A stretch of DNA of 63,765 bases, counting the filler, from Octopus bimaculoides (Eukaryota): the NCBI RefSeq assembly GCF_001194135.2. It is 8 parts of 8 records of this genome, joined end to end, with 100 filler letters (N's around TTAATTAATTAA, not from the genome) between each part and the next. Parts side by side here need not be neighbours in the genome. Positions count along the whole stretch, not along the records: positions 55,845 to 60,081 come from NC_068987.1; 7 more parts are not named here. One strand, given 5' to 3'. Below, one piece after another: positions 55,745 to 60,322 of this stretch (positions within the stretch are counted from its first letter, which is position 1; the number at the start of each line of letters is the position of its first letter). The translations under genes and the position numbers were made by a program. The notes beneath the pieces are model-generated. The model worked only from the letters and a program-made list of their open reading frames with translations, was not told where the DNA came from and made no database searches.

Positions 55745-56527
55745 NNNNNNNNNNNNNNNNNNNNNNNNNNNNNNNNNNNNNNNNNNNNTTAATTAATTAA
55801 NNNNNNNNNNNNNNNNNNNNNNNNNNNNNNNNNNNNNNNNNNNNTTCATGCAACGAGCCAATTTCTGTTATTTATTCAGTCTGGTGCCACAGTGTCCAAG
55901 TGTCAGAATCCAGCCTCTGAATCCGTTAACAAAAGAAAAAAATATTTACTGAAATAAGACTATCAACATGAAAATAAAAGAAAACAAGGAAAAGCAAACT
56001 GCAGACATAGTCTCGATACCAAGAAATTTGATCAGGACAAAAAACGGAAGTCGGAAAAAAATATTTGTATAAATGAACAAATAAATGAAATCAACAAAAT
56101 AATATATTTCCAATAACGATAAATATTTGGTAAATAATTACAATAACAGTGATAAAAATGTCCAAATCGTGCACAACATCACGAAATTGATAAAGATGCA
56201 GTCGGTTTGTTTGATTCCAGCACATGGCCGCAGTCAATTTTTTTTTAGATAGAAATGAAGGGAAAACAATATCTTCGCTTTTGACAAAATATCTTTACAC
56301 ACACAGACGCGTGCGTGCATGCACATACGCGCGCGCGCGCACACACGCACATATCCACACAGATACTCACATTCACTCCTTCACACCACACAGATACACA
56401 CACTCATACACGTACACACACACATACACACACACATACGCATACATAGTCATGTACATATATTCGTGTGTGCCTATACGTATAGATGGATAAGTAGAGA
56501 GATATACAGACAGACAGATAGACAGAC

Positions 56528-56591
<64 letters not shown>

Positions 56592-56901
56592 TGGGCATCT
56601 TAGCGTGGATATACTGTTAGAAAGCTGCATAACTGCGATTTCAATCCCGATAGAGCATCTCGTATTGAAGTATACAGCTAACAAACACAGCAGCATTATC
56701 AGTAGCAGACGAAAAGTATCAAGCGGCAGCGGGAGAATGGCTTAATCTAGATTTCTACTCCCTTGCGTGTCATCAGTAGCAGGTATTCACTAGAAACTGT
56801 ATACTTAGGCAAAAACAGTGATTAACAAATCACTGGTGCTGCAAATAGCTGGGTGGGGTGGATAAAAATTCTACAGCAGCTTTAGTGTCCGTCGCTTTAG
56901 A

Positions 56902-56943
<42 letters not shown>

Positions 56944-56953
56944 NNNNNNNNNN

Positions 56954-57192
56954 ACAAAATTCTGTATATATATATATTACGGAGATGTACTTGCATAGCA
57001 AGTGACCTGATCTCTGAGATCGTGTGCTGGAACGAAGACAATTGCAGCGTGGAAGGTGTTTATAAGCCATTTAAAATAACACACAAAATCCGTTAGATTC
57101 ACTTCAGCATTTAAATTTAATTTGTCAAAATATTTTCGTCGCTTTGAGACCGCAACCTGTTCACTGACAAAATTCTGTATATATATATATTA
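56954..57192 (-). repeat. 213-bp period repeat unit bounded by an identical 26-bp direct repeat, containing a hammerhead-like motif
   Basis: ACAAAATTCTGTATATATATATATTA occurs at 56954-56979 and 57167-57192. The left copy abuts a 10-N gap. Confidence 0.85.
57121..57171 (-). ncRNA. Candidate minimal type I hammerhead ribozyme with a G3-C8 swapped core
   Basis: Minus strand: TTTGTCA-GTGAACA-G-GTTGC[GGTCTCAAA]GCGAC-GAA-AATATT-T/TGACAAA. This gives a 7-bp stem I, a 5-bp stem II and a palindromic stem III. Confidence 0.7.
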
Positions 57193-57344
57193 TGCTTACA
57201 TACAAACATATATGTATATACATATATATACATATACATATATGTATGTGTGTGTATTCCAAGTTGTACATATTGATTTTACTTTAAGGACATATTGATA
57301 TATTGTGTAGGACAATATAGCATTAAAATGAAACAATTCTGAAA

Positions 57345-57391
57345 GCCTTGCGAGTGGATTTAGTAGACGGTAACTACTGAGAAAGAGCACG

Positions 57392-57450
<59 letters not shown>

Positions 57451-57650
57451 TGTATTTGACCACACACCACTATTGTTTAACAACCGGTGCTGGTTTGTTT
57501 ATGTCCCCGGAAATTAGCGGTTCGGCAAAGTGACAGACAGAACAAGTACCAGAACCAAAATCAAAATAATTAAGTACTGGGATCGATTTGTTTGACCAAA
57601 ACCCTTTCAGGTGCCGTCCAGCATGGCTGCAGTCTAATGACTGAAACAAG
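57345..57650 (+). mobile_element. SINE family A, 3' two-thirds, internal (TG)n
   Basis: GAGTGGATTTAGTAGACGG...TTAGCGGTTCGGCAAAG...CAGTCTAATGACTGAAACAAGTA. Confidence 0.85.
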
Positions 57651-58009
57651 TATAGATACTAGAGTGTCATCTGTCATGTGACGGGTAACTCTGGAAGTTC
57701 ACTTTCGCCACCATAGGTAATGTCAAAAAATAAAGCATACGTACAATAATCATCATTTAACCTTTATCAAATTTCTTGATGCTTATGCAAATTGATGGTA
57801 TGAATACTCATTTCCAAAGAAATATTTATTACCTTACAATAAAATTAAATAAAACAAATTTCTCGTTGTATGACTCCTCCCATAACTACTCGGTAATTTA
57901 CTCCTCGTTCTCCACATGTGTTAATTCTTTTTTTCTTTTTTCTTTTTTGCTTTCTTCCTCTCTTTTCCTCTATATATACTTGATGTAAAATGTTACTGCA
58001 GAAATTATA

Positions 58010-58670
58010 GATATATATAATGTTACATTCCTAAATGTAACTACACGTGGTCCGTTGGCGATTTTTCTTTCTCCTGCTTCCTTTTCCTTTTGGGCTTTCC
58101 TATGCTTCCTGTTTCCGAAGAAGAGCTGTGCTTGAAATGTAAAACAACCACTCTTTTCCTTCTCGAGCGTCTTATTAATNNNNNNNNNNNNNNNNNNNNN
58201 NNNNNNNNNNNNNNNNNNNNNNNNNNNNNNNNNNNNNNNNNNNNNNNNNNNNNNNNNNNNNNNNNNNNNNNNNNNNNNNNNNNNNNNNNNNNNNNNNNNN
58301 NNNNNNNNNNNNNNNNNNNNNNNNNNNNNNNNNNNNNNNNNNNNNNNNNNNNNNNNNNNNNNNNNNNNNNNNNNNNNNNNNNNNNNNNNNNNNNNNNNNN
58401 NNNNNNNNNNNNNNNNNNNNNNNNNNNNNNNNNNNNNNNNNNNNNNNNNGATCAAGCAAGAAAAAACAACAACATGAGGACGTAGAATATGTACAGTGTT
58501 ATTGGACGCTCAGGAAAGGAAAGAAAAGAAAGAGGATTTCACGTTTCGAGCGGAGCTCTTCATTAGAAATATAAAAAAAAGTCCAAAGAAGGGAAAACGG
58601 AGAAAGGAAATCGCCAACGATACACACGCGGTCACATATTTAAAAAAATATATATATATAACGCCCGTGC
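58010..58670. mobile_element. Inverted pair of Penelope-like terminal-repeat sequences around a gap, each with a decayed minimal hammerhead
   Basis: Arms ~58010-58179 and ~58497-58670 are imperfect reverse complements. Hammerhead-like motifs lie at 58111-58145 (+) and 58536-58570 (-). Confidence 0.7.
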
Positions 58671-59364
58671 CTGTATATAAATGTGGTGGATGCCGCATTA
58701 TCTTCAAGGATTCTTGGCAGATTTATCCAAAACAATATCTCCTAATTTGATTTATTGTAGAGGGGCTTAGGATGTCAACTTATACCTCCTATAAAAGTTG
58801 ATGGCTGATATAAGTGCTAATATCCAGTAGGCTGCTCAGGGTATTGATGACGAAGTACTCAGCAGCCGTTTCCAGAACAGATTCACGTCAAGACTTATGG
58901 ATACTTTTCATAGACCTTAGGCTGCCATTGTCATCGTGGAATATAGGCGCAACAATTTTATCAGTCTAAAGACGAAACTGTTCTCTTCATCGCACTTTTG
59001 ATTCAGTAGTAGCACTCAACATGCCCCTCTTCCTGCCAAATTTTCGAAAATAAAAAATCTACAAAGAACTACTGAACATATAACATTTTAACATATAGAC
59101 GGGGTTTCAAGCACATATATTTACAGTTACAATTTGAAAAGCCACAGAAATATTGAACACTTGATCTTAAATGACAAAACAGTGTCATTTAATAACGAAG
59201 TGCCAAAGGCAACTTTGATTCCTCTTTTGCTAGCGTTGCAACTCAAAGGGAGATTGCCGACATGAAACGGCTCCAGACAAAAACATATCTGTGAAAGCAG
59301 TTATGTAACAAAAGAGAGTACATTATTGAGAGTACATTATGATAAAGGAAAGAGAAACATGTTT

Positions 59365-59824
59365 TATTTTTTACTTGTTTCAGTCATTAGAATGTAGACA
59401 TGCATGGGCACCATCATGAAGAATTCCTAGTCAAACAAATCGACCCCAGTACTTTTTTAAAGACAGGTACTTATTCTATCAATCTCTTTTGCCGAACCGC
59501 TAATTTACAGGGACGTAAATACACCAACACCGGTTGTCAAGTAGTGGTAGGAGTGGTAGGGATCACAGACACAAACACGCGCGCGCGCGCACTCACACAC
59601 ACACACACACACACACTTACACACACACATTTACACACACACACACACACACACGCACACATATATGACGGACTTCTTTCAGTTTCTGTCTACCAAATCC
59701 ACTCACGAGACTTTCGTCGACCCGAGAGCATAGTAGAAAACACATGCCCGAGGTGCCAGGCAGCGGACTGAACCTAGAACCATGCGGTTGGAAGCCAAGC
59801 TTTTTAACACACAGCTACGCTTCC
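59365..59824 (-). mobile_element. SINE family A, full length
   Basis: Reverse complement of 8627-9044 with an internal (CG)n(CA)n tract. Confidence 0.9.
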
Positions 59825-60322
59825 ACCTTTTTGTTTTTTTATTTTTTTAAGATTACCATATGCTCTCGATAGAGAAGCTGGAGGTAGCCTTGAATTTAGA
59901 TTTAGGATGTACTAAATGACGCGAGCAAAATGTTGCAATAAATTAAAATTTGCCCCTTAGTTGTAGTAAGACAAGAAAAGAAAAACAACTGCTTTCACAA
60001 GAGAAAAAGTAATTTCCAAAAATTAAGGTTCTAATTTACATAAGATTTAATTTTCATTTCTAGCAGGAAAAAGGTGAATTTNNNNNNNNNNNNNNNNNNN
60101 NNNNNNNNNNNNNNNNNNNNNNNNNTTAATTAATTAANNNNNNNNNNNNNNNNNNNNNNNNNNNNNNNNNNNNNNNNNNNNAAATATGTTTAAAAAAACC
60201 TCATTTTAAAATATATTATAAAATTATATATACATATACACAAAAAAATACTCTAAACATACAAAACACCATACACACACGCATATACGCATACATACAT
60301 ATATACATATATATACATGTAC

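What the first reader, a model, noticed from the sequence alone, without database searches (positions are those of the whole stretch)
56954..57192. Retrozyme-like 213-nt unit carrying a hammerhead with a compensatory G3-C8 core swap
Seen: the minus strand of 57121-57171 folds exactly as a minimal type I hammerhead. Stem I is TTTGTCA/TGACAAA (7 bp), the core is G-U-G-A-A-C-A in place of C-U-G-A-N-G-A, then one extra purine, stem II GTTGC/GCGAC, GAA, a stem III that is only the palindrome AATATT, and a UUU cleavage triplet (predicted cut between 57128 and 57127). Both departures from the core consensus (C3G, G8C) fall on the two partners of the C3-G8 tertiary Watson-Crick pair, so they look compensatory. 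Downstream on the same strand the unit ends in CAGAATTTTGT, the start of the next ribozyme, at a 10-N gap, giving a 213-bp period. Established: Penelope-like elements and animal non-LTR retrozymes carry minimal hammerheads with palindromic stem III that cleave as dimers, and the C3G/G8C double change rescues activity in vitro. Inference: this is a collapsed head-to-tail array whose transcript could self-process into ~213-nt monomers or circles, i.e. a cephalopod retrozyme family with a non-canonical core that consensus-based searches would miss.
Basis: partly seen in the sequence, partly recalled or inferred. Interest (0 to 1): 0.88.

Follow-up and report, generated by a model that had tools for sequence, protein, structure and literature searches.

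The report
Possible hammerhead ribozyme with swapped core pair
A 51-base stretch in an octopus-type genome fits the small self-cutting "hammerhead" RNA that Penelope-like jumping genes carry, but with the two partners of one core base pair exchanged; this is one copy with no relatives found, so it is a lead, not a demonstrated ribozyme family.

Summary
The minus strand of 57171..57121 draws as a type I minimal hammerhead. It has a 7-bp stem I, the core GUGAACA, one extra G, a 5-bp stem II, GAA, the palindrome AAUAUU and U17. A 26-nt exact repeat 213 bp apart abuts a 10-N gap.

The match is better than chance for one window: about 5e-4 per 60 kb for stems this good, and about 6e-6 with a palindromic stem III. 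The motif also sits in a (TA)n microsatellite.

No Rfam hammerhead model scores it. The 213-nt unit folds no better than shuffled sequence. Only one complete ribozyme is assembled. No second copy, array, RT gene, conservation or activity could be shown, because the collections hold almost no DNA of this organism (controls).

Best reading, at about 0.5: a short PLE/retrozyme-type insertion carrying a natural G3-C8 hammerhead variant, copy number unresolved. Chance resemblance is about 0.3, and an active circle-producing array about 0.15.

The parts
57121..57171 (-). Hammerhead-like motif, type I topology with minimal (PLE-type) architecture. Predicted cleavage is 3' of U17 (57128), between 57128 and 57127.
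   Evidence: Sequence reading. MFE fold equals stem I plus stem II. It is the only descriptor hit in the piece. Chance rate.
57165..57171 (-). Stem I, 5' strand UUUGUCA. It pairs with 57121-57127 (UGACAAA) in 7 Watson-Crick bp.
57158..57164 (-). Core box G3-U4-G5-A6-A7-C8-A9, where the consensus is C-U-G-A-N-G-A. U4, G5, A6 and A9 are kept; positions 3 and 8 are swapped to G and C.
   Evidence: consensus and numbering from PMC4209133
57157..57157 (-). Unpaired G between A9 and G10.1, a conserved trait of PLE minimal hammerheads.
   Evidence: PMC4209133 discussion and results
57138..57156 (-). Stem II GUUGC/GCGAC (5 bp, one G-U, G10.1-C11.1 at the base) closed by the 9-nt loop GGUCUCAAA (57151-57143).
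57128..57137 (-). G12-A13-A14 (57137-57135), the palindrome AAUAUU (57134-57129; A15.1...U16.1), and U17 (57128). The palindrome cannot close as a hairpin (2-nt loop), but two copies can form a 6-bp helix III between them.
   Evidence: dimer principle from PMC4209133
56954..56979 (.). First copy of the 26-nt exact direct repeat ACAAAATTCTG(TA)6TTA. On the minus strand it ends CAGAAUUUUGU, the first 11 nt of a second ribozyme. It is cut off by the gap.
57167..57192 (.). Second copy of the 26-nt repeat, 213 bp from the first. It overlaps the stem I 5' strand.
56980..57166 (-). Body of the 213-bp unit (36% G+C), with no protein-domain match and no similarity to the rest of the piece.
56944..56953 (.). 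10-N assembly gap. It hides whether the left repeat continues into another unit.
56905..56943 (.). (TA)19.5 microsatellite left of the gap. Degenerate TA/CA repeats also lie right of the unit (57178-57247), so the unit sits inside a (TA)n tract.

Best explanation
The 213-bp unit is most likely a short non-autonomous copy of a Penelope-like-element (PLE) or retrozyme-type retroelement that landed in a (TA)n microsatellite. It carries a minimal type I hammerhead whose C3-G8 tertiary pair has been replaced by G3-C8. Transcribed from the minus strand, two such motifs (neighbouring units or two transcripts) would pair their AAUAUU palindromes into a shared helix III. Each would then cut 3' of U17 (between 57128 and 57127), with G12 as general base and the ribose of residue 8 as acid, as in other hammerheads. 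Cutting is expected to be slow: the swapped pair gives only partial activity in vitro, and stems I and III are A-U rich. At this locus only one complete ribozyme is assembled. The extra 26 nt may be a PLE-style short terminal extension or partial tandem, or the edge of more units hidden by the gap. A solo copy would be an inert relic. Shown: the motif, its hallmarks, the repeat, the microsatellite setting and the chance rate. Inferred: retroelement origin, dimer cleavage, and any activity.
For: (1) All invariant hammerhead positions except 3 and 8 are present in the right order, with a 7-bp stem I and a 5-bp stem II. (2) Chance rate for this stem quality with a C-G or G-C 3/8 pair is 4.7e-4 per 60-kb window. 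It is about 6e-6 if stem III must be palindromic, and about 4e-7 if G10.1-C11.1 is also required, assuming independence. (3) Traits that Cervera & de la Pena list as emerging hallmarks of PLE minimal hammerheads are all present: a nucleotide between 9 and 10.1, G10.1-C11.1, and palindromic 15.2-16.2 (PMC4209133). (4) A natural covariation of the same pair (U3-A8, about 1,300 copies) exists in Schistosoma PLE hammerheads. [quoted passage not shown] (5) The motif lies inside the only non-microsatellite direct-repeat structure of the piece, with a 213-bp unit at 36% G+C. That is within the 150-450 bp, <50% G+C range of metazoan retrozymes. (6) PLEs favour microsatellite targets ((TA)n for Naiads), insert next to earlier copies, and often carry a 30-40 bp extension at one end (PMC8557442, PMC6765202, PMC11167929). 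(7) The host is an octopus-like cephalopod, and Octopus vulgaris has Penelope-clade PLEs with recent insertions (PMC13282606).
Against: This is a single locus; no second copy, conservation or covariation could be examined. No Rfam hammerhead model matches at E<=10, even on a 98-nt query. The 51-mer is not unusually stable (z -1.49), and the 213-nt unit is less stable than its shuffles. No RT or GIY-YIG remnant occurs in any frame of the piece. Stem II is shorter (5 bp against 6-8) and loop 2 longer (9 nt) than typical PLE minimal hammerheads, and stem I is longer (7 against 4-5). UUU is a poor cleavage triplet (my own knowledge). About 0.02 to 20 chance motifs of comparable quality are expected per octopus-sized genome. 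No paper in the library reports a natural G3-C8 hammerhead.
Confidence: 0.5

Rival explanations
1. Chance resemblance: ordinary A+T-rich intergenic DNA next to a microsatellite happens to contain a 7-bp inverted repeat, a small hairpin and the short boxes UGA..A and GAAA in hammerhead order. The G3/C8 'compensation' is a rationalisation of two core mismatches.
For: No Rfam hammerhead hit at E<=10. Fold stability is ordinary. With relaxed stems the descriptor fires 0.05-0.2 times per window, and about 21 motifs with stems this good are expected per 2.7-Gb genome. A poor G3/C8 hit also turns up by chance in 24 kb of Octopus vulgaris. No homologue supports it.
Against: For one window the expectation at the observed quality is 5e-4 to 6e-6. 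G10.1-C11.1 (7.5% by chance), the 9/10.1 bulge, the palindromic stem III (1.2%) and the position inside the only 213-bp repeat unit of the piece (about 6% of its length) are independent of each other, and all point the same way.
Confidence: 0.3
2. One reading: a collapsed multi-unit head-to-tail array (a non-LTR retrozyme) whose transcripts self-process into about 213-nt monomers that are ligated into circular RNAs.
For: The unit ends with the first 11 nt of a second ribozyme exactly at a gap. A repeat whose first 26 nt recur at its end is what a collapsed tandem cycle looks like in a de Bruijn graph assembly (inference). Unit size and G+C fit metazoan retrozymes. A palindromic stem III needs a second copy nearby.
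Against: [quoted passage not shown] TRF finds no 213-bp period. DNA left of the gap is (TA)n followed by unrelated sequence, not unit sequence. The same layout arises from one unit plus a short terminal repeat. The monomer shows no excess structure. No expression data are available.
Confidence: 0.15
3. The 26-nt repeat is an assembly artefact, such as a mis-joined or redundantly placed contig at a microsatellite. In that case there is no repeat unit at all, and the hammerhead-like motif stands alone.
For: The first repeat copy begins at the very first base after a 10-N gap. Both copies are 100% identical, including the (TA) count. (TA)n tracts are typical break points for short-read assemblies, and PLE insertions are noted to cause assembly problems (PMC8557442).
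Against: The usual gap artefact duplicates sequence immediately on both sides of the gap. Here the second copy is 213 bp away and continues seamlessly into unique flank. The artefact would not explain the motif itself.
Confidence: 0.2

Closest known systems
Minimal hammerheads (min-HHRs) in the pseudo-LTRs of Penelope-like elements (Cervera & de la Pena 2014, PMC4209133)
   Same: Type I order; no hairpin helix III but a palindromic 15.x-16.x segment that requires a dimer; an unpaired nucleotide between A9 and G10.1; G10.1-C11.1; no loop-loop tertiary contacts; mostly found as single dispersed motifs from truncated elements; low activity in vitro.
   Different: G3-C8 instead of C3-G8 (or U3-A8). 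Stem II is 5 bp with a 9-nt loop (typical 6-8 bp), and stem I is 7 bp (typical 4-5). No PLE ORF or pseudo-LTR is recognisable nearby. Family membership by homology is untested.
U3-A8 core covariant of Schistosoma mansoni Cercyon PLE hammerheads (PMC4209133)
   Same: A natural replacement of the C3-G8 tertiary Watson-Crick pair by another Watson-Crick pair, missed by consensus descriptors.
   Different: That variant is supported by about 1,300 copies and by linkage to a PLE. This one is a single locus with the transversion pair G-C.
Metazoan non-LTR retrozymes (Cervera & de la Pena 2020, PMC7229834; Li, Clavereau & Pollet 2026 preprint)
   Same: Unit of a few hundred bp (213), G+C below 45%, a type I hammerhead per unit, a head-to-tail junction, and a proposed link to PLE pseudo-LTRs.
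   Different: Only 1.12 units are assembled. There is no second complete hammerhead, no evidence of a multi-copy family or circRNA, and no excess secondary structure.
Engineered C3G/G8C double mutants (Martick & Scott 2006; Anolis Poseidon PLE hammerhead, PMC11167929)
   Same: The same two substitutions. Single mutants are dead and the double mutant partially restores cleavage, which is the biochemical basis for calling the swap compensatory.
   Different: Those are laboratory constructs in otherwise optimal ribozymes; here the swap would be natural and sits in a weak, A-U-rich scaffold.

Membership tests
Hammerhead ribozyme (type I) | Three helices around the core in the order I(5')-core-II-GAA-III-H17-I(3') | tested here: met
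   Sequence reading and MFE fold; descriptor hit. Helix III exists only as a palindrome that needs a second copy.
Hammerhead ribozyme (type I) | Invariant core C3 U4 G5 A6 N7 G8 A9 / G12 A13 A14 / A15.1-U16.1 / H17 | tested here: not met
   9 of 11 fixed positions match. C3 is G and G8 is C. The pair they form is kept as G-C, which is partly active in vitro, but the strict consensus fails.
Hammerhead ribozyme (type I) | Match to a curated covariance model (Rfam Hammerhead_1/3/II/HH9/HH10) | tested here: not met
   No hammerhead family at E<=10 on 4.2 kb or on 98 nt. Whether these models detect PLE minimal hammerheads at all could not be calibrated.
Hammerhead ribozyme (type I) | Conservation of the core and compensatory changes in stems across homologues | tested here: inconclusive
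   No homologue is reachable: no unit ORF in the protein collection and no DNA match in metagenome or viral contigs. Controls with the abundant SINE also found nothing, so these negatives carry no weight.
Hammerhead ribozyme (type I) | Site-specific self-cleavage | not testable with these tools
   Needs in vitro transcription of monomer and dimer constructs.
PLE-type minimal hammerhead | Unpaired nucleotide between 9 and 10.1; G10.1-C11.1; palindromic 15.2-16.2 / loop 3 | tested here: met
   G57157; G57156-C57138; AAUAUU at 57134-57129. Criteria from PMC4209133.
PLE-type minimal hammerhead | Location in a PLE pseudo-LTR or a truncated PLE (RT / GIY-YIG ORF nearby, or homology to one) | tested here: not met
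   No Pfam domain in 22 of the 24 segment-by-frame translations of the piece; two minus-strand frames of 55845-56943 were not submitted. Homology to octopus PLE pseudo-LTRs could not be tested.
Metazoan non-LTR retrozyme | Tandem repeat with at least two consecutive units, each with a complete hammerhead | tested here: inconclusive
   One complete motif plus 11 nt of the next, then a 10-N gap. TRF finds no 213-bp period. Criterion from the 2026 preprint.
Metazoan non-LTR retrozyme | Unit of about 150-450 bp with low G+C | tested here: met
   213 bp, 36.2% G+C; ranges from PMC7229834.
Metazoan non-LTR retrozyme | Multi-copy family; expression as linear and circular RNA of unit length | not testable with these tools
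   No genome-wide or RNA-seq search of the host is available. The monomer shows no excess structure, which is weak evidence only.

The most novel reading that the evidence does not exclude
Octopus genomes harbour a lineage of PLE/retrozyme hammerheads that naturally use a G3-C8 core pair. It would be the first natural transversion covariant of the hammerhead's tertiary pair. It would be invisible to CUGANGA-based descriptors and Rfam models, and still able to cut as a dimer.
Probability: 0.25. Interest if true: 0.6.

Novelty: new variant of a known kind. Interest (0 to 1): 0.4.

Why it matters
If a family stands behind this copy, it would be natural, evolutionary proof that the C3-G8 contact is a true Watson-Crick pair that can be inverted in vivo. 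That would extend the single known natural covariant (U3-A8). It would also show that consensus-box searches undercount hammerheads in animal genomes. It would give cephalopods, whose genomes are rich in PLEs and SINEs, a first ribozyme-bearing mobile element to study. If no family exists, the locus is a reminder that relaxed ribozyme descriptors produce convincing single hits at the scale of a genome.

Tried and rejected
1. Rfam at E<=10 on the whole piece and on 98 nt found no ribozyme family, only microsatellite-driven miRNA noise.
2. Looking for other copies in the piece by blastn-short, Smith-Waterman against shuffles, and TRF found nothing beyond the 26-mer and TA runs. The shared 9-mer CGTCGCTTT at 56890 is within noise.
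3. A protein-route search for copies in public assemblies found nothing: no exact ORF and no hit with a 66-aa read-through frame. The control with an ORF of the abundant SINE was also empty, so the collection does not hold such non-coding ORFs.
4. DNA pattern scans of metagenome and viral contigs found 0. The SINE control was also 0 in metagenomes but 2 in the window, so those collections hold no DNA of this organism.
5. I guessed that 58760-59030 is a decayed Tc1/mariner transposase. Pfam gave no support, so the guess is dropped.
6. The third protein search went to a squid rhodopsin query to fetch real octopus DNA. It confirmed the host group through the SINE, but 24 kb is far too little to test for a family. 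A PLE reverse-transcriptase query would have been the better use, since the tool does print organism names.
7. The Lunse, Weinberg & Breaker (2017) paper on small PLE hammerhead variants is not held, so I could not check whether it already lists G3-C8 variants.
8. A dimer cofold of two 51-mers gave only a trivial strand-swapped structure and is not informative about helix III.

Full report
OBSERVATION. The piece (55845-60081) is A+T-rich, microsatellite-rich, non-coding animal DNA with two assembly gaps. On the minus strand, 57171..57121 reads UUUGUCA-GUGAACA-G-GUUGC-GGUCUCAAA-GCGAC-GAA-AAUAUU-U-UGACAAA. I mapped every base to hammerhead numbering:
- stem I: 57171-57165 with 57127-57121 (7 Watson-Crick pairs)
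- core: G3 U4 G5 A6 A7 C8 A9 at 57164-57158
- one unpaired G at 57157
- stem II: 57156-57152 with 57142-57138 (5 bp, G10.1-C11.1 at its base)
- G12 A13 A14 at 57137-57135
- the palindrome AAUAUU at 57134-57129 (A15.1...U16.1)
- U17 at 57128
RNAfold returns exactly stem I plus stem II as the minimum-energy fold, but the energy is ordinary (z = -1.49). The 26-nt exact repeat (56954-56979 and 57167-57192, 213 bp apart) and the 10-N gap directly before its first copy are also as described.

IS IT MORE THAN CHANCE? I wrote a descriptor for type I hammerheads. It requires N3-UGA-N-N8-A, 0-1 inserted base, stem II, GAA, A15.1...U16.1, H17 and stem I. It finds this motif and nothing else in the piece on either strand. 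I then ran it on 4.11 Gb of first-order Markov sequence with the piece's composition:
- The loosest version fires 0.2 times per 60-kb window.
- With a C-G or G-C pair at 3/8, stem I >=7 and stem II >=5, it fired 16 times. That is 4.7e-4 per window, 3e-5 per piece, and about 21 per 2.7-Gb genome.
- Only 1.2% of core-matching hits had a palindromic helix III, and only 7.5% had G10.1-C11.1.
Multiplying these (independence assumed) gives about 6e-6 and 4e-7 per window, or 0.3 to 0.02 per genome. For one window the match is therefore not expected by chance. For a genome-wide or very large scan, one or a few such hits would be. I do not know how much sequence the first stage read, and a free-form reader can rationalise other deviations, so chance is reduced but not excluded.

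WHAT THE LITERATURE ADDS. Cervera & de la Pena (PMC4209133) defined the minimal hammerheads of Penelope-like elements (PLEs). These have no hairpin helix III and act as dimers. [quoted passage not shown] All three are present here. The same paper reports a natural covariation of the C3-G8 pair (U3-A8, about 1,300 motifs in Schistosoma), so core-pair variants in PLE hammerheads have precedent. In the Anolis Poseidon PLE, the single C3G and G8C mutants kill the hammerhead and the double mutant partly restores cleavage (PMC11167929, citing Martick & Scott 2006). I found no paper reporting a natural G3-C8 hammerhead. The most relevant paper (Lunse, Weinberg & Breaker 2017) is not held.

Several PLE insertion habits fit the setting. 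PLEs prefer microsatellite targets ((TA)n for Naiads). They insert next to earlier copies, giving partial tandems. They often carry a 30-40 bp extension ('tail') at one end, which is explained by two reverse-transcription start sites (PMC8557442, PMC6765202, PMC11167929). Here the unit sits between (TA)19.5 and a degenerate TA/CA tract. It carries a one-sided extension of 26 nt or more that repeats its own start. Metazoan retrozymes have units of 150-450 bp and G+C below 50% (PMC7229834). This unit is 213 bp at 36% G+C.

WHAT SPEAKS AGAINST.
- No Rfam hammerhead model matches, even at E<=10 on a 98-nt query. I could not calibrate whether those models see PLE minimal hammerheads at all.
- The 213-nt monomer, linear or circular, is less stable than its dinucleotide shuffles (z +1.26 and +1.16), so there is no sign of a compact circular RNA.
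- Only one complete ribozyme is assembled. TRF sees no 213-bp period, and the DNA left of the gap is (TA)n followed by unrelated sequence.
- None of the 22 frame translations scanned has an RT, GIY-YIG or any other Pfam domain; two minus-strand frames of 55845-56943 were not scanned.
- Stem II is shorter and loop 2 longer than typical PLE motifs, and stem I is longer.
- UUU is a weak cleavage triplet, and stems I and III are almost all A-U (my own knowledge and inference).

THE REPEAT AND THE GAP. A contig that starts with a 26-mer recurring 213 bp later can arise in two ways. It can be a tandem array collapsed into a cycle. It can equally be a single unit flanked by a 26-nt direct repeat. A graph-based assembly cannot tell these apart without coverage (inference). 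[quoted passage not shown]

RELATED SEQUENCES.
- The unit's longest open frames are absent from the protein collections, and the ribozyme pattern is absent from metagenome and viral contigs.
- Controls show these negatives are empty. An ORF of the abundant SINE in the piece also finds nothing. A SINE pattern that hits twice in the window hits nowhere in the metagenomes.
- To place the host, I retrieved the Octopus vulgaris rhodopsin locus (24.3 kb of OX597836.1). It contains three copies of the piece's composite SINE at 68-73% identity. The two copies within the piece are 75% alike. The piece therefore comes from an octopus-like cephalopod.
- O. vulgaris carries Penelope-clade PLEs with recent insertions (PMC13282606).
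- The 24 kb hold no copy of the unit, and only one poor chance-level descriptor hit. This is too small a sample to say anything about a family.

VERDICT. My best explanation (about 0.5) is a short PLE/retrozyme-type insertion carrying a natural G3-C8 variant of the minimal hammerhead. It would cut only as a dimer, and slowly; at this locus it may be a solo relic. Chance resemblance remains substantial (about 0.3). If confirmed genome-wide it would be a new variant of a known kind, next to the published U3-A8 variant, not a new class. The decisive test is a genome-wide search of octopus assemblies with the unit and with G3-C8 against non-pairing descriptors; it is simple but not possible with the collections available here.

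Noticed in passing
window 57335-57650 (+) and 59370-59810 (-): Two inverted copies of a composite tRNA-derived SINE with an internal (TG)n/(CA)n tract, 75% identical to each other; the first is 5'-truncated. ARAGORN calls no tRNA. Related copies at 68-73% identity lie beside the Octopus vulgaris rhodopsin gene (L001 19342-19693 and 20160-20498), which places the piece in an octopus-like cephalopod.
   Followed up: partly
window 58030-58179 and 58470-58640: Inverted-repeat arms of about 150 nt (75% identity) flank the 290-N gap. This is either a foldback-type element or inverted duplication, or an assembly problem at a hairpin. PLE insertions are known to form inverted-repeat structures, but no hammerhead motif is found in the arms.
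   Followed up: partly
window 56290-56590, 56905-56943, 57178-57262, 57393-57453, 59565-59660: Very high microsatellite density: CA/CG-rich tracts, (GATA)n, (TA)19.5, degenerate TA/CA and (TG)30. These tracts produce all the sub-threshold miRNA 'hits' in Rfam and most of the repeat families reported.
   Followed up: no
L001 23666-23728 (+): A weak hammerhead-descriptor hit, also with G at 3 and C at 8, in the O. vulgaris rhodopsin flank. It has stem I of 5 bp, stem II of 3 bp with G-U at 10.1/11.1, and an unstructured 27-nt helix III. About 0.3 such hits are expected by chance in 24 kb, so I take it as noise.
   Followed up: partly
window 56980-57166 (-): One minus-strand frame is open across almost the whole unit (about 70 codons, one stop per unit). 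It has no Pfam match and no homologue, so it is probably meaningless in A+T-rich DNA.
   Followed up: partly
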